Virus record (IMG/VR): IMGVR_UViG_3300017917_001342
Location: 124,001 to 188,000 of that record
Direction: 5' to 3' (one strand)
Length of the DNA stretch: 64,000 bases
The position numbers and the translations under genes were made by a program. Of this stretch, positions 3,028-59,056 are shown piece after piece. A model generated the notes under the pieces. It did no database searches. It saw only the letters and a program-made list of their open reading frames with translations, and was not told the DNA's origin. Each line of letters opens with the position of its first letter. Position 1 is the stretch's first letter.

Positions 3028-3116
3028 AGGCATCCGGCGACGATGGAGTGTCGTGCTGGTCTCCAAAACCAGTGTCTGTAAAGACTTAGCGAGTTCGAAT
3101 CTCGCGATGCCTGCCA
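3028..3116 (+). tRNA. tRNA-Trp(CCA) with long variable arm
   Basis: AGGCATC/GATGCCT, CTGGT-CTCCAAA-ACCAG, GCCA. Confidence 0.8.
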
Positions 3117-3161
3117 AAAAAGAACTTGTATTAAACGAGTTAAATAGTATACTTAAAAAGT

Positions 3162-3238
3162 CGGAGTGTAGCTCAGTTTGGTAGAGCGCCTGGTTTGGGA
3201 CCAGGATGTCGTGGGTTCAAATCCTGCCACTCCGACCA
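3162..3238 (+). tRNA. tRNA-Pro(TGG)
   Basis: CGGAGTG/CACTCCG, CCTGG-TTTGGGA-CCAGG. Confidence 0.93.
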
Positions 3239-5518: not shown

Positions 5519-5593
5519 GGGTTTGTAGCTCAACGGTAGAGCAGGTGTCTCTAAAACATCGAGGTGTGGGTTCGAATCCCATCTTACCCGCCA
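5519..5593 (+). tRNA. amber suppressor tRNA (CTA)
   Basis: GGTGT-CTCTAAA-ACATC; acceptor has two U.U mismatches; GCCA. Confidence 0.8.
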
Positions 5594-6581: not shown

Positions 6582-6664
6582 GATACACTTGTGGGCACCC
6601 AAGCGTCTTAGTGCGGTATCTGCGGATTGAAAGGGGAGACGGTTCAAATCCGTCGAAGTGTATC
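6582..6664 (+). ncRNA. tRNA-like core on an extended stem, no CCA
   Basis: GATACACTT/AAGTGTATC closing stem; GACGG-TTCAAAT-CCGTC T arm. Confidence 0.45.
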
Positions 6665-7924: not shown

Positions 7925-8116
7925 ATGAAAATCATTGGATTTAAGAAAGGTGCTAACTCAATTAATGCTATAAAATCAGTAAGAAACCATACAGGTATGA
8001 GTCTTGCAGAAAGCAAACGTCTTATTGAAAGTGTACTCGAAGGTAAAATGGTAACACTTGATGAAGACATTGTGCTACGTGAAGAATTAACAGATCAGCT
8101 TTTTATTGTACATTGA
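7925..8116 (+). CDS. ribosomal protein L7/L12 C-terminal-domain-like protein
   Basis: GANSINAIKSVRNHTGMSLAESKRLIES aligns with [28 protein letters not shown] of bL12. Confidence 0.7.
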   Translation: MKIIGFKKGANSINAIKSVRNHTGMSLAESKRLIESVLEGKMVTLDEDIVLREELTDQLFIVH

Positions 8117-8428: not shown

Positions 8429-8539
8429 GGGCTGTTACGTCAAACGGACAACACTGGGGCCTGTGTAATACCAAGACAGTAATGTCCTCTGGAGTCAGAT
8501 AACCTTGGGATATCGGTTCGATCCCGATACAGTCCACCA
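8429..8539 (+). ncRNA. 111-nt CCA-ended tRNA/tmRNA-TLD-like RNA with G3.U70
   Basis: GGGCTGT/ACAGTCC-ACCA, ATCGG-TTCGATC-CCGAT, two internal hairpins. Confidence 0.65.
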
Positions 8540-8894: not shown

Positions 8895-9082
8895 TTTAGA
8901 AGGTAAGAACAAAAGGGTAGCGGGCCGTGTGCCTACAGAGATGATGCTCTGCCGAGTAGGGACTACTGAAAGCTGTTTTAAGGTGTCAGCGACAAACCTT
9001 ATTTTTTTACAAAATCATCATTGACAAGTTAGATCAACTAGTATAGTTACAGTGTTGTAGAAACACACTAGGAGATACTACA

Positions 9083-10055: not shown

Positions 10056-10270
10056 AAGTATCAGAAGGTTGGCTTAGAAGCAGCACATCCTTTAAAGAGT
10101 GGAACGAAGTACCACAGGAGCGAAAGATGCTATGTCGTACTGCATTGCAAGTGGCATAGTAAGATAGCTAAGTGGGAAAATACGGATAGCAACAGAGTCC
10201 CCAGAGAATACAATGGTATTACAACTGTAAGGCAACTGTTTTCCTTTGGCGTAACAGCACACTGATACTT
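10056..10270 (+). ncRNA. 23S rRNA H42-H44 (L11/GTPase-associated centre) mimic with ~150-nt insert
   Basis: AAGTATCAG/CTGATACTT stem enclosing AAGGTTGGCTTAGAAGCAGCACATCCTTTAAAGAGT ... GCGTAACAGCACA. Confidence 0.75.
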
Positions 10271-11016: not shown

Positions 11017-11072
11017 ACTATACAAACAATCATATAGATCATAAAATGTGTTAGACTTATGGAGTTTAACAC

Positions 11073-12017
11073 ATGGCTAGTTTACTAGACCCTGCAATAT
11101 TGTTTTTTATATTTGGTATTTTTGCGGGTTTGATTAAATCAAATCTAGCCATACCAGAACAGATTTCTAAATTTCTATCACTGTATTTGCTAATGGCATT
11201 AGGCCTTAAAGGTGGTTTTGCATTAGCTGCAAATGGCTTTACAGGCGAAATTGCATCGGTAATAGCAATAGGTTTACTATTAGCATTTGCTGTACCTATA
11301 TTAGGATATGCTGTGCTACGAACCAAATTAAATGGTTTTGACGCCGCAGCAGTTGCAGCAACTTACGGTTCAGTAAGTGCCGTCACATTTGTTACTGCAA
11401 CTCAATACTTGTCTATGGTTAACGTAGAATATGGCAGTTACATGGCAGCAGTAATGGCACTGATGGAATCACCTGCTATCATCATGGCTGTGGCATTAGC
11501 AGCGTATATCAGAGCAAGTAAGAGCGTTAGCATTAAACATGTATTGCACGAAAGCTTTACAGATGGTGCTCACATATTGCTGTTAGCAGCATTGGCTATT
11601 GGTTTTGTAACAGGTGCTAGTGGCGAAACAGTAATGAAACCATTTGTTGGTGACCTATTCAAAGGGCTGTTGGCATTCTTCCTGTTAGACATGGGACTAC
11701 AAGTTGCCAAGCGCATACCAGAACTTAGAGATAAAAGCATTGCATTGATAGTATATGCTGTTGCGTCTCCTATAGTTCATAGTATACTTGCATTAACACT
11801 GGCAGTGCTGTTTGGTGTATCTGTAGGCAACGCAATACTGTTAATGGTACTTGCTGCTAGTGCAAGTTACATTGCAGTACCAGCCGTATTAAAATTTGCC
11901 ATACCAGAAGCTAACCCTAGTGTTTACTTTGGATTGAGTTTAGGTATTACGTTCCCCTTTAACGTGCTAATAGGTATACCGTTGTATCATTGGCTAGCAT
12001 CATTAGTGATTGGATAA
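11073..12017 (+). CDS. sbtA: sodium-dependent bicarbonate transport family permease
   Basis: LLDPAILFF...SLYLLMALGLKGG, AATYGSVSAVTF, ASASYIAVPA. Confidence 0.85.
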   Translation: MASLLDPAILFFIFGIFAGLIKSNLAIPEQISKFLSLYLLMALGLKGGFALAANGFTGEIASVIAIGLLLAFAVPILGYAVLRTKLNGFDAAAVAATYGSVSAVTFVTATQYLSMVNVEYGSYMAAVMALMESPAIIMAVALAAYIRASKSVSIKHVLHESFTDGAHILLLAALAIGFVTGASGETVMKPFVGDLFKGLLAFFLLDMGLQVAKRIPELRDKSIALIVYAVASPIVHSILALTLAVLFGVSVGNAILLMVLAASASYIAVPAVLKFAIPEANPSVYFGLSLGITFPFNVLIGIPLYHWLASLVIG

Positions 12018-12020
12018 CAA

Positions 12021-12116
12021 ATGAAATACATTCTAAAATTCTTCGCTACATCGACATCGGGTGATAAGAGTTCACACAGACTCTATACTACTAGGTATGA
12101 GGATCTCTGCCAATGA
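12021..12116 (+). CDS. 31-aa ORF translationally coupled (ATGA overlap) to AOX
   Basis: MKYILKFF...YTTRYEDLCQ; stop overlaps the AOX start. Confidence 0.45.
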   Translation: MKYILKFFATSTSGDKSSHRLYTTRYEDLCQ

Positions 12117-12715
12117 CAGAGCCACAACCAAAAGACTTTAGCGATAGATTTGCTTATAGTTTAACTATGTTCTTTCGTTGGTTTGCTGATACATTTTTTG
12201 CAAAACGCTACGGACACCGTGCAGTGGTTTTAGAAACTGTTGCCGGTGTACCCGGTATGGTTGCAGGCATGTGGCAGCATCTGCGCAGTCTACGTAAAAT
12301 GGAACCAGACAAGCGTGGATGGATTCACACACTGTTAGCAGAAGCTGAAAATGAACGTATGCATTTGATGATCTTTATTGAAATTGCAAAACCAAATTGG
12401 TTTGAACGATTGATTGTAATGTTTGCACAGTTTGTGTTTTGGCATTTCTATTTTGTGCTGTATGTGTTTTTTCCAAAAACTGCACATCGCATGGTTGGAT
12501 ACTTTGAAAATCAAGCAGTTGTAAGTTATACACATTACCTGGAAGAAATTGATGCAGGTCGAGCAGAAAACATACCTGCTCCTAAAATTGCAATTGATTA
12601 CTATCACTTGCATCCCGACGCAAGGTTACGTGATGTTGTTATCGCAGTGCGATTAGATGAACAAGGTCATGCAGATGTTAATCACAGCATGGCAAATGAA
12701 TTAAGCAACGTTTGA
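12113..12715 (+). CDS. aox: alternative oxidase
   Basis: LETVAGVPGMV, EAENERMHL, ENQAVVSY, DEQGH di-iron motifs. Confidence 0.93.
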   Translation: MTEPQPKDFSDRFAYSLTMFFRWFADTFFAKRYGHRAVVLETVAGVPGMVAGMWQHLRSLRKMEPDKRGWIHTLLAEAENERMHLMIFIEIAKPNWFERLIVMFAQFVFWHFYFVLYVFFPKTAHRMVGYFENQAVVSYTHYLEEIDAGRAENIPAPKIAIDYYHLHPDARLRDVVIAVRLDEQGHADVNHSMANELSNV

Positions 12716-15296: not shown

Positions 15297-15300
15297 TAAC

Positions 15301-15732
15301 TTACTTAGATTGAAAAGCGTTACAGCAGCCTTTTGCGTCAACTTTTTCGTTTAGATCAAATGCATCTGGCATTTTTTCATTTAGTAGTTTGAATAAGTCG
15401 CAAGCTGAATCTTTGAACCATACACAGTTTTCGCAGCGTACTTGACCTAACACATAGCCAGCTTGTTCCGGAGTCACTGCGCCCGATATAGGTTGATCAT
15501 CATGTGGTTTACCGTGCAGATACAATCCGCAACTTGCATTGGCAACTACTTTGTCATTTTTGCCAAAAATGCCGCAACGTTCTTTAGTTGGTAAAAACAA
15601 TTGGCAGGTACTGCACTGTGCAAATTCGTCTTTATCACCTTTAGGTGGCAAATAGATGAATGCATTCACTGTTAGCTTGTTTGAACCGCTATCAGTAGCT
15701 TCTAACAGATTTATAATACGTCGCATATCCAT
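15301..15732 (-). CDS. Cys-rich protein with two HiPIP-like 4-Cys repeats
   Basis: CSTC..F..RCGIF..VVANASCGLY and CENC..F..ACDLF..VDAKGCCNAF. Confidence 0.6.
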   Translation of the reverse strand: MDMRRIINLLEATDSGSNKLTVNAFIYLPPKGDKDEFAQCSTCQLFLPTKERCGIFGKNDKVVANASCGLYLHGKPHDDQPISGAVTPEQAGYVLGQVRCENCVWFKDSACDLFKLLNEKMPDAFDLNEKVDAKGCCNAFQSK

Positions 15733-15876
15733 AAAGTTATTTATTACCTATAAACCATAGCGTTTGGACGCACAACCATTGGGTATAGTGTAGTCACTAA
15801 GTGGGGCACTTGTGCCGAACAGGGTTCGCGCCTGTTCTTTTTTTCAAAAAAACTGCATTTATTTTAAAAAATGCTG

Positions 15877-15943
15877 TTGACCATGCTGGCAAGAACAGCT
15901 ATGTTATGTGAGTAAGCAAAACAGCTTACACGCTCTTTGACAA
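15877..15943 (+). promoter_or_regulatory. sigma70 promoter + hairpin + rrn-type boxA leader (unit A)
   Basis: TTGACC-17-TATGTT; GTAAGC/GCTTAC; CGCTCTTTGACAA. Confidence 0.6.
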
Positions 15944-15949
15944 GATAGA

Positions 15950-16386
15950 AAACACAATAGACTTGGTAGTGTGAGGAACACGTAAACCCAAGTTGCGTAA
16001 CGTGTGCTGTTACTACCGCGCGGTTCGGGATACTGTAAAGTATTACTCGTATTGCTAATTGTAGCAGCACACACTAAACAGAAACTGGTAGCTATAGCAT
16101 ATTGTTAATGCGCTATGATATCAGAGGAAGACAGTGTGGCGGCTGTCCAGAGCACTAGCTCTGCAAGCACAAATCAGCTAACATGTGTACTGATACTGGA
16201 GAAACCTGTCGATTCAGGTCAATGGCTGTTTCTGTTTTTACTTGCAACCTGCCTATGTGGAATTGCGTGATAATCTGCTGCGTCAGGCCTGAAGGGACAA
16301 TTCCCGCGGCGCAATGGAAGAGCCACATTAGTCAAAACGTTGAGATTGTATCAAGATGCGAGTGGGTTGCAACTAAAAACAGAAAA
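15950..16386 (+). ncRNA. large structured ncRNA, unit A
   Basis: no credible ORF; long stems 16076-16085/16228-16237 and 16229-16249/16365-16385. Confidence 0.5.
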
Positions 16387-16390
16387 GGCA

Positions 16391-16459
16391 TTGACGTAGT
16401 AAATACGCGATGCTACATTAACTACGTAGACGGTAAACAGTTTACAGGTTCTTTGACAA
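16391..16459 (+). promoter_or_regulatory. sigma70 promoter + hairpin + boxA leader (unit B)
   Basis: TTGACG-17-TACATT; GTAAA/TTTAC; GGTTCTTTGACAA. Confidence 0.6.
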
Positions 16460-16469
16460 TTAGGGAATA

Positions 16470-16575
16470 CTAACAGTTGCGGTTGGGGCACAAGTGGTTG
16501 GCCTGAATCCATAAAACTCCTTGGGTGATGCCTGTCGGGAGCAAGCTGAGTTCGAATCTCAGACGCAACTGTTAG
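16470..16575 (+). ncRNA. tRNA-like core on a 12-bp stem, no CCA
   Basis: CTAACAGTTGCG/CGCAACTGTTAG; CTGAG-TTCGAAT-CTCAG. Confidence 0.55.
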
Positions 16576-16584
16576 TTAATAAAC

Positions 16585-16704
16585 AGCAACGCAAGTCTGT
16601 GTAATGCTAAGAGATCGGGGTTCAAATCCCCGGATTGCGGGGAAACCAGGCGAACTAGCTTAACTGGTAAAAGCGATTAGCGTAACAGGTATGCTTGCGT
16701 TGCT
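16585..16704 (+). ncRNA. circularly permuted tRNA-like module 1 (YrlA-type topology)
   Basis: long stem, then GAGAT, T arm, GAAA-capped acceptor-like stem, TAGCTT-AACTGGTA-AAAGC D arm, back into stem. Confidence 0.7.
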
Positions 16705-16712
16705 TTGATAAT

Positions 16713-16829
16713 ACAGGGTGTTGTTTGAATAACACTTGCCGGTGTCACGGGTTCGAGTCCCGTTCGGTCCATTGCGGGTCGATAGCTCAGTTGGTAGAGC
16801 ATGGTGAGAGTATCAAACATTCATCCTGT
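16713..16829 (+). ncRNA. circularly permuted tRNA-like module 2 (YrlA-type topology)
   Basis: GTGTC, ACGGG-TTCGAGT-CCCGT, TCGGTCC-ATTGC-GGGTCGA, TAGCTCAGTTGGTAGAGC. Confidence 0.75.
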
Positions 16830-17376
16830 TGTAAACGACATGGGCCCGAACTAAGTATCGGATAATAAAATAAAAAGGCCATAAGCGCAGCAGCGCAACG
16901 TCTTAAGTGACCATTTGTAGCAGCCTAGGCTACACCGAGGCACATGTTAACTAGCGCAGGGTGACGAACCCGTAAGACGCAAGAATATTGGTACTGCTAC
17001 TTGAAATGCAGCTAAGTCGCTCGAATACGAGAGTAGAGCCACACGCAGGAGGGTCCAACTGAAAGAGAAGGCGCTACCAAGTACACCATCAACTAAGTTG
17101 AATGTTTGTGCGACTTTAGGTAGAGATGCTACCCAGCAGAGTTTGCAAATCTAATGAGCTCGCACTGAAATTGGAATACGGTGTTAAAAGTTGCAATACT
17201 GATTCAAACGTATTAGTATACCCATCTTAATACGTTGGTGTTAATGGCTTGTGGGTAACGGTAACTTAACTTAGCAATAGGTTAGACGCGGAGGGACTAT
17301 CAGCGAAAGCTTGCATACCCATAGATGTGATGCCGGGCTGGCAGGGAGGAATGAGACTCCCACTTTGATAGATTTT

Positions 17377-17453
17377 GGGGGATTAGCTCAATTGGTTAGA
17401 GCGCCGGACTCATAATCCGTAGGTTGCTGGTTCGAGTCCTGCATTCCCTACCA
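17377..17453 (+). tRNA. tRNA-Met(CAT)
   Basis: CGGA-CTCATAA-TCCG. Confidence 0.9.
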
Positions 17454-17476
17454 TGTTTTATTAGTTGGAGAACAAT

Positions 17477-17647: not shown

Positions 17648-17650
17648 CAC

Positions 17651-18153
17651 GCCTGCTAGTCAAGAGTAGAAAAGCAATGAGACTAGTAGGTCCTTAGCGG
17701 GATAAACAAAGTAACCTGTGGCGCAGTGCTTGCGAGCATGGATGAAACGTAAGTGTTTAGACTATAACTGATATGCATCTCCTCCTTCCCCGCTAGCTAG
17801 GACGGGTTGGTTGTAGATCTGATGCTGATCGAATGGTTCGAATCCTGGGAGAGCACTGCATATCAGTTTAAATTCTGTTTTCACATGTACTATGTTCTGG
17901 GAACACTTTAACCAGGGTTAGAGTGCTGGGTTCGATTCCCGGGCGGGTTAAATGGGGGTTCGAGTCCCTCAGTAGTACAGTTGAAAGCAGAATTTGCAAT
18001 TCGGTTTCTACCTGCATTAGACAGTGTAAAGGTGCATATACTTTGGGCGAACGTAGTAAGATAGGATGAAGTACAAGTCCCGTATCTGCTAGTAGTTTTT
18101 GGACAAGGTGGGGCCAGTTCGAATCTGGCACTGATGCAGTTAGAAACAGAATT
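17651..18153 (+). ncRNA. ~500-nt structured RNA with several T-loop hairpins
   Basis: long stems at 17766/17857, 17871/17988, 17998/18141; GGTTCGA hairpins at 17926, 17954, 18113. Confidence 0.5.
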
Positions 18154-18155
18154 TT

Positions 18156-18234
18156 TGCGGGGTAGAGAAGTCTGGTCGTTCTCGCCGGGCTCATAACTCG
18201 GAGATCAGTGGTTCAAATCCACTCCCCGCAACCA
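18156..18234 (+). tRNA. tRNA-Met(CAT), initiator-like
   Basis: TGCGGGGTAGAG..., CCGGG-CTCATAA-CTCGG, AACCA. Confidence 0.85.
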
Positions 18235-18573
18235 ATATTATGAGTGTGTAACCCGCGGAGGGTTGAAGATACAAGAAGCTGTTGTATCGAGCGAGGTCAT
18301 TCTTCAGCGCAGACTCACCAATTATAACTAAATGCGGATAGCACCGCTTGCATACTGAGTAAGTATTAGCACGCCGCATATATCCCACCAGAGTGTCGGT
18401 AAACCACGGTAAGGGGAAGGTGCTTGAAGACATTGTATTACGTGTGGCAAATACTAGAGTATTACCTACTCCCACTTATCAGGGAATTACCTGCGCTGTA
18501 CATCTTAGATGATAACGGTTGCAAACACGATAAGACGTAATATAATTAAAACACTTATATAGGATATAATCCA

Positions 18574-19356: not shown

Positions 19357-19729
19357 AAATTTTCAAAAGGCAGTATAGTTTGCACGGATGAGTGTACCAA
19401 TGCAAATCAAACGCTTTGCGTTTTGAATGTTGTAAGTCGCCACATCGAGGTCGGGAAAATAGATGCTTTATATAGGGCCTTGCGGGGCGCTTATGTAGAC
19501 AACCTCTATTTGTAACCTTGGGAACCCGGATACTGAAAAGTGGATGCATACACGTTCCTTTTGATTTTGAATGGTCCGGAATCGCCTCTTAACAATGCGC
19601 ACCATTTATAGCAGGGATTTACCTGTGAACCCCGAGGACGCTCGGGACTACGGACATCCCGGGGTAATAAGCCCCATTTTATTATAAAATTTACACATAT
19701 ATCAAGTATAATTACTTGTAAAATATAGT

Positions 19730-20971
19730 GTGATAATGGATCAATTTTTTCAAAAAACTGTAGGTAGCAATTTTGCATGCGGCTATAAATGGGCATGGAG
19801 TACCATACGGTTACAGACTAGAACAACAAATAGTTGTCATAGAACCGATCAAGACATTATCACACCAGAAACATTTGATTCATTTCATAACACACCAATT
19901 AAATTGCAAACTCGCAAAGCCATGTTAAATGGACAATGGCCGGGTCACGGTTGCGAGTACTGTAAACACATAGAAGATTCTGGTGGCATCAGTGATCGCA
20001 TGTATGCTAATGAACATATACACAACGCTTACATACCTCATGAACTAATAACTAATCCAAAATCGTTAAAAACTACACCCACTATGGTTGAGGTGTATTT
20101 TAGTAATCTTTGCAATATGAGTTGCATTTACTGTAATGAATCATTTAGCACAGTTTGGGAACAAGAAAAACTCAAACACAACGAGCCGATTGCATCTAAT
20201 TTACTGTCGATTAGTTCTGTCGATTACAAAAAAATGACAGACGCATTTTTTACTTGGTTAGATAAAAATATCTATTCGATATTTGAGCTAAACATTTTGG
20301 GCGGCGAACCATTCTTTCAACCAGAACTTGATAGAATGTTAGCATTTATAGAAACGCACCCAAATCCAGATCTAACACTTAAAATATTTTCTAACTTAAA
20401 AGTTCCTACACAAAAGTTTTCTACTATTCTACGTAAATTAGATAGTTTTATCGAATGTAATATAGTCAAACAAGTTGAAATAATAACCAGTATAGACTGT
20501 TGGGGGCCGGAACAAGAATACATACGTACAGGAATTTCTCTTCGTCAATGGGAAGAGAATTTTTCGTACATGGTAAAAAATCATCAAAATATTAACATAC
20601 GAACCCACGGTACCATCACCTGTCTTACCATTAAGACTATATATGGCTTAATTGAAAAAATTAACTTTTACAATAGTTTCAGATCTAACTCTGAGATAAT
20701 TTATTCGTCCGATTTGCTAGTAGAACCAGAGTTCTTACAGTCGGGTATATTCCCATCGGGTTTTTTCGACGATGATTTTGCTGCTATTTTACAAATAGTA
20801 CAAGAAGATTATACAAAAGAGAAAATAACCAATCATTGGTTATCTGTAAACAATCATCAGTATAAACCAGAACTTATTTCAAAACTAAAAGCATTTTTAA
20901 CAACACTTGATATCAGACGCAACACCAACTGGAAATCTACATTTAAATGGCTAGATGAGTTTCAAGTGTAA
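19730..20971 (+). CDS. radical SAM protein (twitch/SPASM-type N-terminus), paralog 1
   Basis: NLCNMSCIYC, GGEPFF, N-terminal C..KW / SCH / CEYC. Confidence 0.88.
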   Translation: MIMDQFFQKTVGSNFACGYKWAWSTIRLQTRTTNSCHRTDQDIITPETFDSFHNTPIKLQTRKAMLNGQWPGHGCEYCKHIEDSGGISDRMYANEHIHNAYIPHELITNPKSLKTTPTMVEVYFSNLCNMSCIYCNESFSTVWEQEKLKHNEPIASNLLSISSVDYKKMTDAFFTWLDKNIYSIFELNILGGEPFFQPELDRMLAFIETHPNPDLTLKIFSNLKVPTQKFSTILRKLDSFIECNIVKQVEIITSIDCWGPEQEYIRTGISLRQWEENFSYMVKNHQNINIRTHGTITCLTIKTIYGLIEKINFYNSFRSNSEIIYSSDLLVEPEFLQSGIFPSGFFDDDFAAILQIVQEDYTKEKITNHWLSVNNHQYKPELISKLKAFLTTLDIRRNTNWKSTFKWLDEFQV

Positions 20972-20973
20972 AC

Positions 20974-22209
20974 ATGGAAAATATGTTTGAAAAATTAACA
21001 GGTTATCGTGCCGGATGTGCAGCTAAATGGAATTGGAGCACAGTTTTTTTAAACCAAGGCACAACTGCTAGCTGCCACAGAACCGATACTGATACTGTAG
21101 ATCATATATCTATACACAATTTTCATAATACCCCGCTAAAGTTGAAAACACGTCAACTGATGCAGCAAGGACAATGGCCAGGGCATGGGTGTGAGTATTG
21201 TAAACATATAGAAAACTCCGGTGGTATCAGCGACAGAATGAATTCAAATTCTCTGTTTAATGGCAAAAAGATTCCGCACGAATTGCTTGTTAATACAGAT
21301 GCAATACACACAACGCCCACGGTACTAGAAATAAATTTTACCAATTTATGTAACATGAGTTGTATATATTGCAGCGAAGGATGGAGTTCTGTATGGGAAC
21401 AGGAAAATATCAAATTCAATGATCGCATTGAACAAGCCCCTAGACTATTAAAAGGCGCAGAGTACGAAAGAATCCTGTTTGAATTCTTTCAATGGTTAGA
21501 CACAAACGTCGAACATTTGTCAGACCTACACATATTAGGTGGGGAACCATTTATTATGCCAGAATTTGACAAAACCGTCGAGTTTCTAAAAACACGCAAG
21601 TTGCCAGATTTGAATTTGGTAGTAATTACCAATTTGAAAATAACCAGAGACAAGCTAACTCAACACCTGTCGGTATTGAATTCGCTATTAGACAACAATG
21701 CCATTGGATCTGTAAGAATAGTTGCTAGTTTAGATTGTTGGGGACCGGAACAAGAGTATATACGTACTGGATTGTCCTTGCAGCAATGGGAAGACAACTT
21801 TGCATTTATAGTAAAAAACTATCGTAACATAGACATCAATGTACACAGTACAATCACAGGTCTTTCTATAAAGACCACCGACAGTTTAATAGACAAAATC
21901 AACTATTACAGGACATTGCTAGATAACAATAAAAACATTATTCATTCTAAGAATTTTGTTACAGGCTTTAGTTACTTGAGTCCAAAAATTTACCCTTATG
22001 GTTTTTTTGATAGCGATTTTGAAAAAATATTGACCAAAATAACTGATAGTTATGAGCTAGAAGAAATGAAAGGCTATAAATTATCAATTGATAACGAGCC
22101 ATATAACCCAGCTCTAATAGAAGATTTAAAACGATATCTAGATAAATTGGATTTTAGAAGAAACACAAATTGGCGTAACTATTTTTCATGGTTAGACGAG
22201 TTTAATTAA
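20974..22209 (+). CDS. radical SAM protein, paralog 2
   Basis: NLCNMSCIYC, GGEPF. Confidence 0.88.
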   Translation: MENMFEKLTGYRAGCAAKWNWSTVFLNQGTTASCHRTDTDTVDHISIHNFHNTPLKLKTRQLMQQGQWPGHGCEYCKHIENSGGISDRMNSNSLFNGKKIPHELLVNTDAIHTTPTVLEINFTNLCNMSCIYCSEGWSSVWEQENIKFNDRIEQAPRLLKGAEYERILFEFFQWLDTNVEHLSDLHILGGEPFIMPEFDKTVEFLKTRKLPDLNLVVITNLKITRDKLTQHLSVLNSLLDNNAIGSVRIVASLDCWGPEQEYIRTGLSLQQWEDNFAFIVKNYRNIDINVHSTITGLSIKTTDSLIDKINYYRTLLDNNKNIIHSKNFVTGFSYLSPKIYPYGFFDSDFEKILTKITDSYELEEMKGYKLSIDNEPYNPALIEDLKRYLDKLDFRRNTNWRNYFSWLDEFN

Positions 22210-22210
22210 A

Positions 22211-23461
22211 ATGGAAGATCAGTTTTCAAAACTCACCAATGGAAAATTTGGATGTGGTTACAAATGGGCATGGAGCACAATTTTTTTACAGCAAGGGTCT
22301 AGCTCTAGTTGTCATCGTACTATGCAGGACTTTTTTGATGAACAAACTGTGCAACAGTTTCATAACTCTCCATTGAAGCTGCAAAGTCGTAAAGCCATGT
22401 TAGATGGTCAATGGCCGGGGCATGGTTGTGAATACTGCAAAAATATAGAGGCTGCTGGCGGTATTAGTGATAGACAACAAATAAACAAAAAATTTCAAGG
22501 TCTTATTGTACCTAAAGAACTGTTAACTGATTCTACTGCAATCAATGTATCGCCTACTATGATTGAATTGCATTTTAGTAATTTGTGTAATATGAGTTGC
22601 ATATATTGTAACCAACGATTCAGTTCGGTATGGGAACAAGAAAATTTAAAGCACGGCAACATATTTGCAGATACCGAATTTCTATTAAATCACAGTGCAA
22701 CCGGTCGTATGATAGATTCATTTTTTGATTGGCTGCACTACAATATAGGCAATTTAGTTAAAATTAACATACTTGGTGGTGAACCATTTTATCAATCTGA
22801 GTTTTATAGATTTATAGATTTCTTAGCCGAGCATCCAAATCCAAATTTAGACATTACTGTGTTTTCTAATTTAAAAGTTAATGAAAATAAATTTTCATCG
22901 GCATTGAAACGATTAGAAACTTTTGTAAAATCCAACATTGTCAAAAGTGTAGAAATAGTTGCTAGTTTAGATTGTTGGGGACCTGAACAAGAATACGTTA
23001 GAACTGGGCTGTCTTTACAACAATGGGAAGATAATTTTGCACTGTTGGTAAACAATTTTCAAGATATTGAAGTACAAATTCATGGCACAATATCAAGTTT
23101 GACTATTAAAACTATCCCAGATCTACTCAACAAGATTAATTTTTACAATAGTATGCGTAGTAAACACCCAATAAGTTACTCTAATAACATACTAGTGCAT
23201 CCAAATTGCTTACAACCTGGTATATTTCCTTTGGGGTTTTTTGATGATGATTTCAACAAAATACTGCCTCTTATACAAAATCAAGCAGAACACGATGAAA
23301 TGCAAGGCTATTTCAAAACCATTAACAATACAGACTACAATCCTCAATTGATAATTGAATTGAAACAATACCTAGACACGTTGGATATCAGACGACACAC
23401 AAATTGGAAAACAGTGTTTCCATGGTTAGATCAGTTCGATGTTGACAAACATCACAGTTAG
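22211..23461 (+). CDS. radical SAM protein, paralog 3
   Basis: NLCNMSCIYC, GGEPFY. Confidence 0.88.
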   Translation: MEDQFSKLTNGKFGCGYKWAWSTIFLQQGSSSSCHRTMQDFFDEQTVQQFHNSPLKLQSRKAMLDGQWPGHGCEYCKNIEAAGGISDRQQINKKFQGLIVPKELLTDSTAINVSPTMIELHFSNLCNMSCIYCNQRFSSVWEQENLKHGNIFADTEFLLNHSATGRMIDSFFDWLHYNIGNLVKINILGGEPFYQSEFYRFIDFLAEHPNPNLDITVFSNLKVNENKFSSALKRLETFVKSNIVKSVEIVASLDCWGPEQEYVRTGLSLQQWEDNFALLVNNFQDIEVQIHGTISSLTIKTIPDLLNKINFYNSMRSKHPISYSNNILVHPNCLQPGIFPLGFFDDDFNKILPLIQNQAEHDEMQGYFKTINNTDYNPQLIIELKQYLDTLDIRRHTNWKTVFPWLDQFDVDKHHS

Positions 23462-24463: not shown

Positions 24464-24540
24464 GGTTCCGTAGCTCAGTTGGATAGAGCAGGGAACTTCT
24501 AATTCCAAGGTCGAGGGTTCGAATCCTTCCGGGACCGCCA
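24464..24540 (+). tRNA. tRNA-Arg(TCT)
   Basis: GGAA-CTTCTAA-TTCC, GCCA. Confidence 0.92.
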
Positions 24541-24586
24541 TATGTTTTCCATTGGTTAGAGATAAATACTCTAACCAGGAGCAATA

Positions 24587-24919
24587 ATGACATCATTCAC
24601 TTGTAGAACATGCGGCATAGAAGGTGAAGAAAACTTCTATAAAACTGCAAAGTATCAATGCAAGAAGTGCTGGAATCAGCGCACTTACAAAACAGGCATT
24701 GACAAGATCAATAAACTTAAATCTGAACTAGGCGGATGCTGTGCGCGATGCGGTTACGATAAGTATCTAGGCGCACTTGAGTTCCACCATTTGGATCCCA
24801 CAGTAAAAGAATTTGCACTAGGACACAAGAGGGGGCTGTCTGAAGAAGCACTTCGAAAAGAGATTAACAAGTGCATCCTACTGTGTGCGAACTGTCATAG
24901 AGAAGAACATCAAGTCTAA
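24587..24919 (+). mobile_element. HNH endonuclease inserted in a tRNA-Arg gene
   Basis: CARCGY..ALEFHH..LLCANCHREEH; stop codon lies in the TCTAA anticodon loop of the orphan 3' tRNA half. Confidence 0.8.
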
Positions 24920-24957
24920 GCAGTGGGTCGCAGGTTCGAGTCCTGCAGGGACCGCCA
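24915..24957 (+). pseudogene. 3' half of the disrupted tRNA-Arg(TCT)
   Basis: TCTAA-GCAGT-GGGTC-GCAGGTTCGAGTCCTGC-AGGGACC-GCCA. Confidence 0.75.
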
Positions 24958-27005: not shown

Positions 27006-27089
27006 GCGACTGTGGTGGAATGGTAGACACGCTAGCTTGAGGTGCTAGTGGCGCAAGCCGTGGAAGTTCGAATCTTCTCAGTCGCACCA
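27006..27089 (+). tRNA. tRNA-Leu(GAG)
   Basis: CTAGC-TTGAGGT-GCTAG. Confidence 0.93.
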
Positions 27090-27129
27090 AATATTTCTCA
27101 ATAGTAGTTTTTTCACAGTAAATATCTTT

Positions 27130-28251
27130 ATGGAAAACACTGATAAAGATTTTTATTGTGCAGCACCGTTTGTGAATAGATCGTACGATCCAAACGGTAA
27201 AGTTAAACCTTGTTGCGAATGGCACAACTTAGATACAACTGTCGACGATGAACAACAGTTGATTTCTCTACGATCTCAATTTTTACAAAACAAACCAAAT
27301 CCCTGTTGTAAAGTCTGTCATAAAACAGAAGCTGCTGGGGTACAATCTACTAGAAATGATTTTAACAACAGGTACGGTAGACCAACTGTACCTGTGCTGC
27401 GTCATTTGGATCTAAGTCTAGGCAATCTATGTAATTTCAAATGTAGAATGTGCAGCAGTTTTTTTAGCACAAAATGGGCCAGTGACGAACAAGCATTGGG
27501 ATTGATTCCACACAAGTTGTACAGACGTACCTGGGATGAATTGAAACATTTAGACATATCAAATGTAGATATGATCAAGTTCAAAGGTGGCGAGCCTTTT
27601 CTAGAACAAGAAACAATGATCAATACCCTAACTGCAATCTTATCTCAAAAAGGCTCGTTAGAAAATATTACAGTTGTTGTAAACACAAATGGATCTATAG
27701 AAATAGAACCAAGATTGATAGAGTTGTTGTCTCTTTGCAAAACTGTTAACTTAACAGTTAGTATAGATGGATACGGTAAAGTAAACGAATATCAACGCAC
27801 AGGCGCAGTATGGAATGTAATAGAAAAAAATCTATTAGATTTTCAAAAAAATCTCAACAATAACTTTGACTTATCTATATGGTCTGTGTGGACTATACTC
27901 AACATTACTAACTTAAAAACACTGTTAGGCTGGGTTACAACCAACTTGCCTAGATACAAAATCTATGGTACTACGCTGCATTTTCCAGAAGAGTTTGCTA
28001 TACGCAATATACCAGACCAACTAAAAACGCAATTTTTTAATGACATTAGCAATTGGTGTGAACTCGATCACAACGACGGTGTGCTAGAAAACAAATTACA
28101 GATTTTAAATGAGTTACAACAACAGCCTATAAAAACGATCAACGAAGTTAAATCTTACATAGATAGCCTTGACAAAGTTAGAAATGAGTCGTTTTCTTTA
28201 ATAGATCCTGTGATGTATGCGGCATTTTTTGAATCAACTGTTGACATATGA
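27130..28251 (+). CDS. radical SAM protein with twitch/SPASM domain
   Basis: CAAPF..PCC, NLCNFKCRMC, GGEPF. Confidence 0.88.
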   Translation: MENTDKDFYCAAPFVNRSYDPNGKVKPCCEWHNLDTTVDDEQQLISLRSQFLQNKPNPCCKVCHKTEAAGVQSTRNDFNNRYGRPTVPVLRHLDLSLGNLCNFKCRMCSSFFSTKWASDEQALGLIPHKLYRRTWDELKHLDISNVDMIKFKGGEPFLEQETMINTLTAILSQKGSLENITVVVNTNGSIEIEPRLIELLSLCKTVNLTVSIDGYGKVNEYQRTGAVWNVIEKNLLDFQKNLNNNFDLSIWSVWTILNITNLKTLLGWVTTNLPRYKIYGTTLHFPEEFAIRNIPDQLKTQFFNDISNWCELDHNDGVLENKLQILNELQQQPIKTINEVKSYIDSLDKVRNESFSLIDPVMYAAFFESTVDI

Positions 28252-29039: not shown

Positions 29040-29920
29040 CACGATATTAACGTTGTGAAACGTGGATGTTGTGTTTACGCATTGGGGGTTTAGCCTCAAC
29101 AGGATAAGTGCAGTGATGCACCCAAAGCTAGAAAGCCTACATACTAGCGCCAGCAGTGGTCCATCTAAACAAGCCTGAACTAGACTTGACTCGGGTTAAA
29201 CCGAAAGCAAGTCCCGTCCGTAGAAAGGCGGTAGGCAGTAAGTTAGGAATAGTGTCCGAAAGGATAGTTGCAGAGCCAGTCGGTGAGCGATAAGAGGGTT
29301 GGCGCCCAAACACTGTTCAGCCAAACTAACGAATGCTGAAAGTTAACAGGTAGGTACAGAGTCTGAGCCCGCAAGCAAAGGCATGGTACCATTTCGAGAG
29401 TGGAAGGGTTAGGCCCCGGATACTTGAAGAAACACTGATTAGTCCGCAAGACGAAAGGTATGAGGTGTGCTGTATTGGGTATGTCAAAAGCATATTCAGC
29501 AGCCGAGGTAGCACATCTCGGATAGGTTGCAAAATCAGCTAATGGTAAGCTAATTCCCTTCTAAGGAATCGATTGCAGGTTCAACTCCTGTTTTTGAAAA
29601 ATGCAAAGTCTACCTCGGTATGTAGTGTAAGGTGTCAAATACTTGAGGCGCAAGCCAATCAAGTTCAACAAAGCTCGCAAGGCAGCGTTGATTTGTGCTA
29701 GAAGTTTCGTAGCCCGCAAGGCTTAATGGTCCGCAAGATCAACGGAAAACAAGGTGCAGAATAGCTACATACGACGAGTCTACTGCCTGACTCTAAAAAC
29801 GGCGACACTGTTAATGGACTAGGTTACCGCAAGGGACTTAGTGGATGTCGGAAGAAAGCGGCTCGCAAGGCTGGCAATAATGTCCGAAGCGTTAACATCG
29901 AACGTGTAATCTCAGCGTTT
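29040..29920 (+). ncRNA. GOLLD-like large ncRNA (5' boundary uncertain)
   Basis: ~0.9 kb without credible ORF, at least 9 GCAA/GAAA-capped hairpins, GGTAGGTAC..GAGTCTGAG, GAGGTAGCACATCTC and terminal GTAATCTCAG blocks recalled from GOLLD; tRNA-cluster context. Confidence 0.6.
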
Positions 29921-38965: not shown

Positions 38966-39225
38966 CTGTTGCATTTTTAACTGCACTGTGCTATAGTGAG
39001 TTATTGATTATGCGAAAAAAGGTTCGTAGTAGCGGCTAGTAATCCAGGAACCTTGCGGCAAATAAGGTGAGAACGCCCGCCTCACACACCAGCAATGGTA
39101 AAGTAGCGAAAGCGAAGAGATGTAGGAATCTTGTCTATATGGCAAGTTGAAAACAGGGACCCTACTATTTGCCAATACCCATTAAGATCGTCTGTAGGCT
39201 AGCCAAATTTTTAAAAAGGTGTGTT

Positions 39226-49928: not shown

Positions 49929-49948
49929 ATTTCGTATAGGAGTTCGAT

Positions 49949-50620
49949 TTGATACAACCATTTATACACAAGGACGACGTACTGATTGTAGAAAGACTAT
50001 GCAGTGTTAGATCTAATTTTTGGATTGCTGGCGGTGCACCTTTAAATTGGTATCAAAATATACCAGCAGACAGCGACATAGATTTATATTTCAAAAGCCA
50101 AAAAGATTACAACACATTAAACGATGCGTTATCCGCTGCATATGAGTCCGACGAGCATGTAGCAACAGACGGATACTTTACACTGTTTAGCAGTGCAACA
50201 AAGAAAAAAGCAAGACTGTTTAAAAACGATATTGTAGTCCAACACCGACACAATACAGAAAACGCAGTTACCTACACACTAGGTGTTGCTACTAAAACCG
50301 GTGACATAGACGAAGACTTTCCTATTTGGAAAGTTCAGTTGATCAAACGTAAATTCTACGATACCGTACAAGAAGTCATTGATGATTTTGATATTACTGT
50401 GTGTCAAATTGCACTAGACGTGCTTGTTAGACCCGTCACTGGTAAACTGTTTGCAGAAGATGTTGCTGCTAAACGTTTGAGATTTAATCGTCTATCACCT
50501 GGCAGCGCAAAAAGATTGATAAAATATTGGACCTATGGCTATACTCCCAGCGATGAGGTATTACAATCAGTTATTGATCATCCAGACCTAGATCTGCGTG
50601 TATCGGGAGATGACTACTAA
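49949..50620 (+). CDS. nucleotidyltransferase (polyA polymerase/CCA head-like)
   Basis: WIAGGAP..DSDIDLYF..DDFDITVCQIA. Confidence 0.7.
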   Translation: MIQPFIHKDDVLIVERLCSVRSNFWIAGGAPLNWYQNIPADSDIDLYFKSQKDYNTLNDALSAAYESDEHVATDGYFTLFSSATKKKARLFKNDIVVQHRHNTENAVTYTLGVATKTGDIDEDFPIWKVQLIKRKFYDTVQEVIDDFDITVCQIALDVLVRPVTGKLFAEDVAAKRLRFNRLSPGSAKRLIKYWTYGYTPSDEVLQSVIDHPDLDLRVSGDDY

Positions 50621-56792: not shown

Positions 56793-56856
56793 ACTAGACA
56801 ATATAAATAACTGCGCAACGGGATAGACCCAACGCATAACAATAGTAGGATTTACT

Positions 56857-57954: not shown

Positions 57955-57965
57955 GGACAAAGAAA

Positions 57966-58594: not shown

Positions 58595-58650
58595 ATTATA
58601 GTATAAGTCCTCGAAATAGATTGAGGCAGCAACGTCAAGGGATACTTGAA

Positions 58651-58995: not shown

Positions 58996-59056
58996 CAGTT
59001 ACTAACCAAGTCCAACTGATAGACAGTTGGCATCTAACTCAAGGGAGACTTGAAAA

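What the first reader, a model, noticed from the sequence alone, without database searches (positions are those of the whole stretch)
16585..16829. Tandem circularly permuted tRNA modules: T arm first, loop-closed acceptor, D arm last
Module 2 is textbook: variable GTGTC, T arm 16747-16763, acceptor 3' strand TCGGTCC, 5-nt linker ATTGC, acceptor 5' strand GGGTCGA, U8-A9, D arm GCTC-AGTTGGTA-GAGC. The anticodon stem then continues as a ~25-bp irregular helix back to the 5' end. Module 1 repeats this with a GAAA-capped acceptor. Established: bacterial YrlA Y RNAs have this topology and work with Ro60/Rsr, and permuted tRNA genes exist in some algae and archaea. I see neither the bulged-C Ro60 helix nor a Ro60 gene in this window, and no anticodon loop can be rebuilt. 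This suggests Ro-independent elbow decoys or a new Y-RNA subclass expressed in tandem.
Basis: partly seen in the sequence, partly recalled or inferred. Interest (0 to 1): 0.85.

Follow-up and report, generated by a model that had tools for sequence, protein, structure and literature searches.

The report
Y-RNA-like tRNA mimics in megaphage
Two adjacent small RNA genes in the tRNA gene cluster of a 518-kb phage fold like tRNAs cut open at the anticodon and closed at the acceptor end; this is the design of bacterial YrlA "Y RNAs", but here no Ro-type partner gene lies nearby and the usual Ro-binding sequence is missing.

Summary
Window 16583-16704 (M1) and 16713-16829 (M2) are each a circularly permuted tRNA cloverleaf on a 23-24 bp helix. 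They are the only two hits of a strict topology descriptor among about 48 tRNAs in the window.

They belong to the YrlA (Rfam RF02553) design. M2 scores 44.8 bits, inside the 34-51 bit range of viral YrlA-like RNAs that sit beside TROVE/Ro60 genes; M1 scores 27.6. All of these are below Rfam's cut-off of 69. The Levitt pair covaries between the two modules: G15:C48 in M2, A15:U48 in M1.

Tandem copies are ordinary: 15 of 42 TROVE loci with a module carry 2-4. A module inside a phage tRNA array with the Ro gene 37 kb away has a precedent in mycobacteriophage Phabba.

Three things differ:
- No TROVE or DUF2828 gene occurs in the 107 kb examined. That is 21% of the source contig; the rest could not be read.
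- The stems lack the Ro motif GNCGAAN0-1G. Only M1 carries the ACAGCAA signature that I found to mark DUF2828-linked modules.
- Three further helix-closed tRNA-like modules (M0, M3, M4) lie nearby.

Verdict: a new variant of a known kind. Ro-independence is unproven. Interest is moderate.

The parts
16583..16704 (+). Module 1 (M1): whole helix-closed permuted tRNA-like RNA. Terminal helix 16585-16596 / 16693-16704.
   Evidence: YrlA model 1-114, 27.6 bits; z -4.8.
16583..16589 (+). ACAGCAA at the 5' edge of M1. This is the motif found upstream of 13 of 16 DUF2828-linked modules and 0 of 52 TROVE-linked ones. Here it is mostly base-paired rather than sitting in an internal loop.
   Evidence: Chance of ACAGCAA in a 60-nt flank is about 1% per module.
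16606..16681 (+). M1 tRNA-like core: anticodon-stem analogue GCTAA/TTAGC, variable GAGAT, T arm 16616-16632, acceptor-like hairpin 16633-16655 (6 outer positions, 5 of them paired with one A.A mismatch, then a small internal loop and a GAAA cap), TA, D arm 16658-16674.
   Evidence: Descriptor hit; direct reading. A15:U48 Levitt pair, G18 G19, U54 U55 C56, A58 are present.
16713..16829 (+). Module 2 (M2): whole helix-closed permuted tRNA-like RNA. 24-bp irregular helix 16713-16741 / 16802-16829.
   Evidence: YrlA 44.8 bits, E 3e-8; z -3.6.
16737..16806 (+). M2 tRNA-like core: TGCCG/TGGTG, variable GTGTC, T arm 16747-16763, 7-bp acceptor 16764-16770 / 16776-16782 joined by ATTGC, TA, D arm 16785-16800. 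The acceptor reads G1-C72, G2-C71, G3.U70, with A at the discriminator position.
   Evidence: 82-85% identity over 64-67 nt to the Y RNA downstream of the Ro-like gene of cluster-L mycobacteriophages.
16775..16776 (+). Predicted RNase P nick site in the M2 linker, 5' of G+1 of a 7-bp acceptor. Inferred, not shown.
   Evidence: By analogy with M. smegmatis YrlA, which is cleaved by RNase P and receives CCA because it has a 7-bp acceptor stem (PMC4201824).
16470..16575 (+). Module 0 (M0): tRNA-like RNA in normal order. D-arm-like hairpin, extra hairpin, T arm 16546-16562, all closed by a perfect 12-bp helix. No anticodon loop and no CCA.
   Evidence: z -3.9. Not called as a tRNA even with introns allowed.
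17869..17995 (+). Module 3 (M3): 14-bp closing helix enclosing two T-arm-like hairpins (17926, 17954). Absent from a related strain contig.
   Evidence: z -6.9. L410 lacks 17888-17997.
17996..18155 (+). Module 4 (M4): long closing helix with a T arm (18113-18129) as the last element before the 3' strand, like M0.
   Evidence: z -3.0. Strain contig L409 carries C18115U + G18127A, a compensatory C-G to U-A change in the T stem; G18133A turns G.U into A-U.
16391..16419 (+). Promoter-like site (TTGACG-17-TACATT with TG) 50 nt upstream of M0. Candidate only.
   Evidence: the number of such sites is not above the shuffled expectation.

Best explanation
M1 and M2 are two paralogous YrlA-type Y-RNA-like tRNA mimics carried by a 518-kb phage.

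**Shown:**
- Each has the T-arm/D-arm elbow, the class-I variable loop and the tertiary-pair nucleotides of a tRNA.
- Each has an acceptor stem closed by a loop.
- In each, a 23-24 bp helix stands in place of the anticodon arm.
- The same design, on the same strand, flanks TROVE (Ro60) and DUF2828 ("Ro-like") genes in many viral contigs, often in tandem.

**Inferred:**
- They are transcribed with the + strand tRNA array, in an interval free of called genes (15727-17476), and released as RNAs of about 120 nt.
- The tRNA-like body is handled by tRNA enzymes (TruB, Dus). For M2, whose acceptor has 7 pairs, RNase P would nick the 5-nt linker and CCA would be added, as in M. smegmatis YrlA.
- The long helix docks a Ro60-family ring protein encoded elsewhere in the phage genome (more than 34 kb upstream or 47 kb downstream) or by the host.
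- The resulting particle would steer exonucleolytic decay or repair of structured RNA such as tRNA during infection.
For: - **Topology and coordinates:**
- **Rfam YrlA is the best and only family hit:** 44.8 bits (E 3e-8) and 27.6 bits, both aligned over the full model 1-114.
- **The scores match known Ro-adjacent RNAs:** Finnry 39.5, L002 45.4, TROVE-adjacent viral modules 34-51 bits.
- **Sequence match:** M2 is 82-85% identical over 64-67 nt to the RNA just downstream of the Finnry/Lolly9 Ro-like gene.
- **Association:**
  - 61 clean descriptor hits in 42 of 80 TROVE loci, all on the gene's strand and upstream of it.
  - 19 clean hits in 16 of 80 DUF2828 loci, all on the gene's strand.
  - 0 in 1.03 Mb of control loci.
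- **Tandem copies are common:** 15 TROVE loci carry 2 or more modules.
- **Paralogue covariation between M1 and M2** (direct reading):
  - Levitt pair G15:C48 versus A15:U48.
  - D-stem pair C13-G22 versus U13-A22.
  - All four stems differ in sequence yet stay paired.
- **Not recent debris:** no tRNA in the window resembles either module beyond the universal D and T arms.
- **Precedent for a distant partner:** Phabba has a module in its tRNA array at 93.9 kb and a TROVE + vWA_Ro60 gene at 130.9 kb.
- **A hint at the partner:** M1 carries ACAGCAA, the signature of DUF2828-linked modules (13/16 versus 0/52).
- **Context:** DUF2828 genes occur in 709 phage records including megaphage Lak-A1, often beside tRNA arrays, RtcB or RNA ligase.
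Against: - No TROVE or DUF2828 gene was found by profile search in the window plus 15 kb upstream. None appears in the Pfam-annotated gene lists for contig positions 89.6-196.2 kb.
- The source contig was not among the best 80 viral loci for either protein family, though both lists were truncated.
- GNCGAAN0-1G is absent from 16400-16900.
- In the 60 nt upstream of its core, M2 has none of the three stem signatures tested: the TROVE-type G[AG]GC[CA]G[GA]A box, the GGUUAYC box, or the DUF2828-type CAGCAA. It therefore lacks both the TROVE-type and the DUF2828-type signature.
- In M1 the ACAGCAA is paired inside the terminal helix, not in the asymmetric loop seen in DUF2828-linked modules.
- Both Rfam scores are below the gathering score. 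M1's is no better than a tRNA-dimer artefact at 3065-3221, which scores 26.3 bits.
- No orthologue of the locus was found, so the terminal helices have no covariation support.
- Transcription is not shown.
Confidence: 0.5

Rival explanations
1. Ro-independent tRNA mimics. M1/M2, together with M0, M3 and M4, would be a phage family of helix-closed tRNA-like RNAs that act through the tRNA elbow or acceptor alone. They could be decoys or sponges for host tRNA-recognising factors such as tRNA-directed defence nucleases, modification enzymes or RNase P. Alternatively M2, once nicked by RNase P, could be a two-piece CCA-tailed RNA that can be charged (G3.U70 + A73 is the alanine identity set).
For: - Neither Ro-family stem signature is present in M2, and neither is properly placed in M1.
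- No Ro-family gene lies within 34 kb upstream or 47 kb downstream.
- Five differently built tRNA-like modules cluster within 1.7 kb of the tRNA array.
- M4 shows structure-preserving substitutions between strains.
- Permuted modules with no Ro-family gene in the fetched locus occur in other phage tRNA arrays: L265, L294, L300 (two modules) and L301. L285 is a further such module, but its locus has no predicted tRNA.
- M2 has a 7-bp acceptor with G3.U70 and A73, the same top three pairs as the phage's own tRNA-Ala.
Against: - Absence of Ro was tested on only 21% of the contig and not at all in the host.
- Phabba shows that a module in a tRNA array can coexist with a distant Ro gene.
- Some of the "orphan" modules elsewhere do carry the DUF2828-type ACAGCAA signature (L267, L294), so being an orphan within a 10-kb locus says little.
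- G3.U70 is not general among 7-bp acceptors (5 of 22) and may be chance.
- No decoy target is identified.
Confidence: 0.3
2. Non-functional debris of tRNA-array recombination: junctions of duplicated tRNA halves that happen to fold.
For: - The region is plastic. Strain contigs differ by cassette-sized insertions and deletions, and M3 is absent in L410.
- Orphan T arms and a duplicated tRNA-Arg 3' end occur elsewhere in the window.
- tRNA dimers mimic YrlA for the Rfam model (PMC4201824).
Against: - The two acceptor strands of each module are complementary to each other and joined by 5 or 11 nt.
- Every tertiary-interaction nucleotide is kept, and the Levitt pair covaries between M1 and M2.
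- Terminal helices of 23-24 bp fold far better than shuffles.
- No parental tRNA is present in the window.
- The descriptor finds no such object in 1.03 Mb of control phage DNA.
Confidence: 0.07
3. Circularly permuted tRNA genes, as in Cyanidioschyzon merolae, or a two-piece tmRNA, matured into a working tRNA or tmRNA.
For: The gene order (3' half before 5' half) is the same.
Against: - There is no anticodon loop. The anticodon-stem analogue runs on as a helix to the ends.
- The acceptor ends are joined by 5-11 nt with no encoded CCA, although 45 of 46 tRNAs here encode CCA.
- ARAGORN with tmRNA and intron modes finds nothing here.
- Rfam's permuted-tmRNA model gives no hit in 15300-17400.
Confidence: 0.02

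Closest known systems
YrlA Y RNAs of bacteria (Rfam RF02553; S. Typhimurium, M. smegmatis; Chen et al. 2014, PMC4201824)
   Same: - Permuted tRNA-like domain: T arm, loop-closed acceptor-like stem, D arm.
- Tertiary-pair nucleotides, including a covarying 15:48 pair.
- 5' and 3' ends paired in a long stem.
- Several copies per locus.
- M2 shares the 7-bp acceptor that makes M. smegmatis YrlA an RNase P and CCA-adding substrate.
   Different: - Below Rfam's gathering score.
- No GNCGAAN0-1G motif.
- Not within 4 kb of a Ro60 gene (none within 34-47 kb).
- The stem is a nearly continuous 23-24 bp helix.
- Embedded in a phage tRNA array.
Phage Y RNAs next to Ro-family genes: cluster-L mycobacteriophages (Finnry gp54, DUF2828) and TROVE-encoding viral contigs
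   Same: M2's core is 82-85% identical to the Finnry/Lolly9 RNA. Rfam scores are similar (39-51 bits). Tandem arrays lie on the gene's strand.
   Different: Those RNAs carry family-specific stem signatures: helix-ACAGCAA ... helix-UG for DUF2828, and G[AG]GC[CA]G[GA]A plus GGUUAYC for TROVE. They lie within about 2 kb of the gene. M2 has neither signature, and M1 has only ACAGCAA, in a paired context.
Mycobacteriophage Phabba (NC_054714): unannotated YrlA-like element at about 93.88 kb inside the tRNA array, with Ro (TROVE + vWA_Ro60) gp130 at 130.9 kb
   Same: A permuted tRNA-like module sits between tRNA genes of a large phage, with the Ro gene tens of kb away.
   Different: Phabba's element keeps the TROVE-type stem (GGGUCGAC ... 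CGGUUAUC). A Ro gene is demonstrably present in that genome.
Deinococcus radiodurans Yrn1
   Same: M0 and M4 resemble its arrangement: T arm near the 3' side, with the acceptor-equivalent helix open and extended to the RNA ends.
   Different: No sequence similarity was tested. M0/M4 have no Rfam hit and no known protein partner.
Circularly permuted tRNA genes (Cyanidioschyzon merolae, some archaea) and two-piece tmRNA
   Same: The 3' half is encoded before the 5' half.
   Different: Those mature into RNAs with an anticodon loop or a tag reading frame and a free CCA end. M1/M2 have no anticodon loop, no tag and a closed acceptor.

Membership tests
YrlA / bacterial Y RNA (RF02553) | Permuted tRNA-like domain: T arm, then a stem-loop in the acceptor position, then a D arm | tested here: met
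   Direct reading, folds, descriptor, for both M1 and M2.
YrlA / bacterial Y RNA (RF02553) | tRNA tertiary-interaction nucleotides, with 15:48 as G:C or A:U | tested here: met
   U8, A9, A14, G18 G19, G46, U54 U55 C56 and A58 are present in both. M2 has G15:C48 and M1 has A15:U48 (criterion from PMC4201824).
YrlA / bacterial Y RNA (RF02553) | Score at or above Rfam's gathering threshold (69 bits) | tested here: not met
   44.8 and 27.6 bits. TROVE-adjacent viral modules also score only 34-51 bits, so the threshold is tuned to bacterial members.
YrlA / bacterial Y RNA (RF02553) | GNCGAAN0-1G motif near the 5' end (proposed Rsr contact) | tested here: not met
   No match in 16400-16900. The relaxed TROVE-type patterns are also absent upstream of M1 and M2.
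YrlA / bacterial Y RNA (RF02553) | Encoded within about 4 kb of a Ro60 (TROVE) gene | tested here: not met
   No TROVE or DUF2828 gene in contig positions 89.6-196.2 kb.
YrlA / bacterial Y RNA (RF02553) | A Ro60-family protein is encoded somewhere in the genome (or host) | tested here: inconclusive
   Only 21% of the 518,643-bp contig could be read. The contig is not in the truncated best-80 lists. The host is unknown.
YrlA / bacterial Y RNA (RF02553) | Bound by Rsr; pseudouridine 55 and dihydrouridine made by TruB and DusA | not testable with these tools
   Needs immunoprecipitation and modification mapping.
DUF2828-linked phage Y RNAs (class defined here) | Terminal helix followed on the 5' side by (A)CAGCAA in an asymmetric loop; 3' strand followed by UG; DUF2828 gene within about 2 kb on the same strand | tested here: not met
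   M1 has ACAGCAA at 16583-16589 at a typical distance (16 nt) from the core, but paired in the helix. M2 lacks it. No DUF2828 gene is nearby.
Circularly permuted tRNA gene | An anticodon loop can be rebuilt after joining the ends; a processing motif at the junction; a free acceptor end after removal of the linker | tested here: not met
   The helix continues 23-24 bp to the ends with no 7-nt loop. ARAGORN finds nothing here.
Two-piece (permuted) tmRNA | Tag reading frame and tmRNA pseudoknots; detected by ARAGORN or by Rfam's permuted-tmRNA model | tested here: not met
   No tmRNA call. No tmRNA hit in 15300-17400 at E up to 10.
tRNA-dimer artefact | T arm of one complete tRNA followed by the D arm of the next; acceptor strands belong to different tRNAs | tested here: not met
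   The strands are mutually complementary and 5 or 11 nt apart. There are no flanking anticodon arms and no overlap with predicted tRNAs. True dimers (L003; 3065-3221) look different.

The most novel reading that the evidence does not exclude
The megaphage carries a family of at least five helix-closed tRNA mimics (M0-M4) that work without any Ro-type protein. They would be co-transcribed with the tRNA array. They could act as sponges for host factors that recognise the tRNA elbow or acceptor, for example tRNA-directed defence nucleases. Alternatively M2, after an RNase P nick and CCA addition, could act as a two-piece RNA chargeable with alanine. Similar orphan modules in other phage tRNA arrays (L265, L300, L301) would make this a general, undescribed accessory of phage tRNA islands.
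Probability: 0.2. Interest if true: 0.75.

Novelty: new variant of a known kind. Interest (0 to 1): 0.5.

Why it matters
Bacterial Y RNAs are known almost only as neighbours of Ro60 genes.

This locus, and the small census made here, show the same tRNA-mimic design inside phage tRNA arrays, away from any Ro-family gene. The stem sequence of such modules tracks the partner family:
- ACAGCAA goes with DUF2828.
- GCCGGA-like and GGUUAYC boxes go with TROVE.
- M2 has neither.

If M1/M2 prove to bind a distant or host Ro protein, phages would be seen to reprogramme the Ro/exonuclease RNA-surveillance machine with their own Y RNAs. If they do not bind one, they define a Ro-independent use of tRNA mimicry during infection. 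Either result is directly testable with about 120 nt of RNA.

Tried and rejected
1. **Rfam at gathering score:** no hit in the region. Hits appear only at the E-value threshold.
2. **Ro-family gene in the window:**
   - tblastn with the Finnry Ro-like protein found nothing.
   - A profile of 9 phage DUF2828 proteins and phmmer with Phabba Ro, run on all six-frame ORFs of the window plus 15 kb upstream, found nothing.
   - Pfam on 29 window ORFs found no TROVE or DUF2828.
3. **Ro-family gene on the rest of the contig:**
   - The search for related loci with DUF2828 (A1) and TROVE (A3) alignments did not return the source contig. Both outputs were cut to the best 80 of 487 and 323 relatives, so this is inconclusive.
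   - Walking with the look-up of encoding contigs reached only positions 89.6-196.2 kb. I stopped because each step adds about 8-10 kb.
4. **Orthologues for covariation:**
   - Pattern scans of the viral and metagenome collections found only the source contig, an actinophage-type YrlA (L002), plain tRNA pairs, and one unrelated permuted module (L383).
   - The nearest radical-SAM relatives are 41% identical or less.
   - Exact-protein look-ups gave strain contigs that cover M3/M4 but not M1/M2.
5. **A covariance model of my own:** not built. MAFFT misaligned the acceptor hairpins of unequal length, and covariation counted on descriptor-selected hits would be circular.
6. **Derivation from a tRNA in the window:** rejected.
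7. **G3.U70 as a general feature of 7-bp acceptors:** rejected (5 of 22).
8. **Structure in 16830-17376:** none (z -0.5).
9. **Supplementary tables of Chen et al. 2014:** not held.

Full report
**Source and setting**

The window is positions 124,001-188,000 of a 518,643-bp viral contig: IMG/VR UViG 3300017917_001342, which is JGI contig Ga0192394_117770.
- Its first 41 kb is a + strand tRNA island with 46 ARAGORN tRNAs, a GOLLD RNA and a skipping-rope RNA.
- The island continues 4.4 kb upstream of the window.
- Protein genes include SbtA, PTOX, many radical-SAM paralogues, MetK, UvdE, NAMPT and a ClpB-like ATPase.
- JGI calls no gene in window 15727-17476 or 17648-18573. The finding lies in the first of these gaps.

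Yes. The minimum-free-energy fold is the permuted cloverleaf:
- a 7-bp anticodon-stem analogue,
- a 5-nt variable loop,
- the T arm,
- a 7-bp acceptor closed by ATTGC,
- UA,
- the D arm.

This core sits on a further 2+7+8 pairs running to 16713/16829 (z -3.6).

Module 1 threads onto the same plan. Its acceptor-like hairpin is 23 nt long and GAAA-capped, and its terminal helix has 12 bp. The cloverleaf is 3.9 kcal/mol above the minimum-free-energy fold, and the module has z -4.8.

I wrote a descriptor that requires five things:
- a T arm with a consensus loop,
- an immediately following self-complementary hairpin,
- U8,
- a D arm with GG,
- a 5-bp stem joining the flanks.

Its results:
- In the window it finds only M1 (16606-16681) and M2 (16737-16806).
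- It rejects a true tRNA dimer, L003.
- It finds no tRNA-free hit in 1.03 Mb of control large-phage DNA.

**What the two modules share**

Both keep the nucleotides of the tRNA tertiary network: U8, A9 with U12-A23, A14, G18 G19, G46, U54 U55 C56 and A58.

The Levitt pair covaries: G15:C48 in M2 and A15:U48 in M1. This is the covariation Chen et al. 2014 used as evidence for a tRNA-like fold in YrlA. All four stems differ in sequence between M1 and M2 but stay paired. One example is the D-stem pair C13-G22 versus U13-A22.

Neither module resembles any tRNA of the window beyond the universal D and T arms. They are therefore not recent recombination products.

**What family is it?**

The only Rfam family that matches is YrlA (RF02553). 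M2 scores 44.8 bits (E 3e-8 in a 2.1-kb search) and M1 scores 27.6 bits. Both align over the full model and both are below the gathering score of 69.

M1's score alone proves nothing. An ordinary tRNA pair at 3065-3221 reaches 26.3 bits, and Chen et al. warn about exactly this artefact.

The threshold is not decisive for viral members either:
- The RNAs just downstream of the Ro-like gene of mycobacteriophage Finnry and of L002 score 39.5 and 45.4 bits.
- Modules upstream of TROVE genes in nine viral contigs score 34-51 bits.
- M2's core is 82-85% identical over 64-67 nt to the Finnry/Lolly9 RNA.

**Association with Ro-family proteins**

The Finnry "Ro-like RNA binding protein" is not TROVE. 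It is DUF2828 + DUF7788 with a vWA fold. Relatives occur in 709 phage records, including Lak-A1, Serratia BF, ValKK3, Felix-O1-like phages, P100 and Campylobacter phages. They often lie beside tRNA arrays, RtcB, RNA ligase or ROOL RNA.

Descriptor results in three sets of loci:

| Loci | Clean hits | Placement |
|---|---|---|
| 80 viral loci around DUF2828 genes | 19, in 16 loci | all on the gene's strand |
| 80 viral loci around TROVE genes | 61, in 42 loci | all on the gene's strand and upstream; 15 loci with 2-4 copies |
| 79 control loci (1.03 Mb) | 0 | - |

Tandem modules are therefore the rule rather than a novelty.

**Stem signatures track the protein family**
- *DUF2828-linked modules:* an 8-12 bp terminal helix is followed on the 5' side by (A)CAGCAA, and the 3' strand is followed by UG. 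CAGCAA is present upstream of 13 of 16 such modules and 0 of 52 TROVE-linked ones.
- *TROVE-linked modules:* a G[AG]GC[CA]G[GA]A-like box (32 of 52) and a GGUUAYC-like box (49 of 52). Neither box occurs in any of the 16 DUF2828-linked modules.
- *M2:* none of these. The strict Rsr motif GNCGAAN0-1G is absent from the whole of 16400-16900.
- *M1:* ACAGCAA at 16583-16589, 16 nt before its core, which is a typical distance. The chance of this is about 1% per 60-nt flank. However, it is mostly paired within the terminal helix rather than lying in an asymmetric loop.

This hints at a DUF2828-type partner for M1, no more.

**Is a Ro-family gene present?**

Not in the window or nearby:
- tblastn, a DUF2828 profile and phmmer with a TROVE protein all found nothing on every ORF of 40 aa or more.
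- Pfam on 29 window ORFs found nothing.
- The Pfam-annotated gene lists for contig positions 89.6-196.2 kb contain none.

That region is 21% of the contig, and the remainder could not be read. Two family-wide scans of the viral collection did not return this contig, but they show only the best 80 of 487 and 323 relatives.

Distance is not evidence of independence. Phabba carries an unannotated YrlA-like module between tRNA-Val and tRNA-Glu at about 93.9 kb, and its TROVE + vWA_Ro60 gene lies at 130.9 kb.

A sample of 80 viral loci picked by a loose T-arm/D-arm pattern gave 15 clean permuted modules in 12 loci:
- Four loci had a Ro-family gene in the fetched stretch.
- Five loci with adequate flanks did not: L265, L285, L294, L300 and L301. 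Four of these are tRNA-rich; L285 has no predicted tRNA.
- Some of the modules whose fetched stretch shows no Ro-family gene still carry ACAGCAA: L294, and L267, whose locus is only 1.5 kb long.

**More modules nearby**

- M0 (16470-16575, z -3.9) and M4 (17996-18155, z -3.0) are tRNA-like RNAs in normal order. The T arm is the last element inside a long closing helix, which recalls the Yrn1 arrangement and the T-arm-bearing YrlB.
- M3 (17869-17995, z -6.9) encloses two T-arm-like hairpins.
- Two short contigs from other samples cover M3 and M4. One lacks M3 entirely. The other carries a compensatory C-G to U-A change in the M4 T stem and a G.U to A-U change in its closing helix.

The modules therefore behave as cassettes under structural selection. 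No such strain data could be obtained for M1/M2.

**Mechanism**

*Shown:* the fold, the family resemblance and the genomic association.

*Inferred:*
- co-transcription with the tRNA island;
- release of RNAs of about 120 nt;
- handling by tRNA enzymes;
- for M2, whose acceptor has 7 pairs with G at +1, an RNase P nick in the linker followed by CCA addition, as demonstrated for M. smegmatis YrlA;
- docking of a Ro-family ring on the long helix.

M2's acceptor (G1-C72, G2-C71, G3.U70, A73) copies the alanine identity set and the top of the phage's own tRNA-Ala. G3.U70 is not general in this class, so I treat this as a curiosity.

**Verdict**

This is a real, well-formed pair of YrlA-type tRNA mimics. 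It fails two defining features of the family (the motif and adjacency to a Ro gene). It is therefore best filed as a new variant of a known kind, not as a member of the family and not as a new class. Ro-independence is possible (about 0.3) but unproven.

Noticed in passing
window 16470-16575; 17869-17995; 17996-18155: Three further helix-closed tRNA-like modules (M0, M3, M4) with no Rfam family. M0 and M4 have the T arm last, before a long closing helix; M3 has two T arms. Strain contigs show loss of M3 and compensatory changes in M4.
   Followed up: partly
L013-L092 (viral loci with DUF2828 genes), e.g. L025:4346-4463, L049:4803-5126: Permuted tRNA-like RNAs flank DUF2828 "Ro-like" genes and share a terminal-helix + ACAGCAA ... 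UG signature. TROVE-linked RNAs lack it (13/16 versus 0/52). I found no paper describing this.
   Followed up: partly
L175:3455-3600 (Mycobacterium phage Phabba NC_054714, about 93.84-93.98 kb): An unannotated YrlA-like element lies between tRNA-Val and tRNA-Glu in the tRNA array, 37 kb from the phage's TROVE Ro gene gp130.
   Followed up: partly
L265:1674-1757; L300:8132-8202 and 8908-8977; L301:9652-9724: Permuted tRNA-like modules lie inside other phage tRNA arrays with no Ro-family gene in the fetched 10-14 kb. The two L300 modules share a different 5' motif (CAUCCUUCU).
   Followed up: partly
window 29462-29918: GOLLD RNA (234 bits) with a tRNA-Arg(UCU) gene embedded at 29527-29600.
   Followed up: no
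window 39057-39173: skipping-rope RNA, above Rfam's gathering score (46.9 bits).
   Followed up: no
window 5519-5593: tRNA with a CUA anticodon (amber suppressor; ARAGORN labels it Pyl). The large genes checked read through normally in the standard code.
   Followed up: no
window 24464-24957: An orphan T arm + acceptor 3' strand + CCA (about 24930-24957) repeats the 3' end of tRNA-Arg 24464-24540, with a 115-aa ORF (24575-24919) between them. This looks like an insertion that duplicated the tRNA 3' end.
   Followed up: no
window 8429-8539; 1308-1335; 6638-6654: tRNA-Tyr with a 16-nt intron, found only with ARAGORN's intron mode. Two further orphan T arms remain unexplained; the one at 1308 is followed by an acceptor strand and CCA.
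   Followed up: no
window 19712-23461, 27049-28251; L378:10001-21224: At least ten radical-SAM or SPASM paralogues of about 410-470 aa lie in runs on both sides of the tRNA island. Relatives at 41% identity or less occur in many large viral contigs.
   Followed up: no
window 49940-50620, 56827-60436; L377:15080-15742: Gad2-family protein, NMNAT-Nudix, NAMPT and an NMN transporter: an NAD-salvage and anti-defence cluster.
   Followed up: no
window 11070-12715: SbtA bicarbonate transporter and PTOX-type alternative oxidase side by side. These are host-metabolism genes typical of phages of cyanobacteria.
   Followed up: no
window 10066-10116: Weak Rfam match (21 bits, E 0.02) to positions 1098-1144 of bacterial 23S rRNA. 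A gene with a weak ribosomal L12 domain hit lies at about 7925-8116.
   Followed up: no
L009:468-1019 (Listeria phage P100plus): A ROOL-like RNA (86 bits, below the cut-off) lies between tRNAs and the DUF2828 gene, with RtcB downstream.
   Followed up: no
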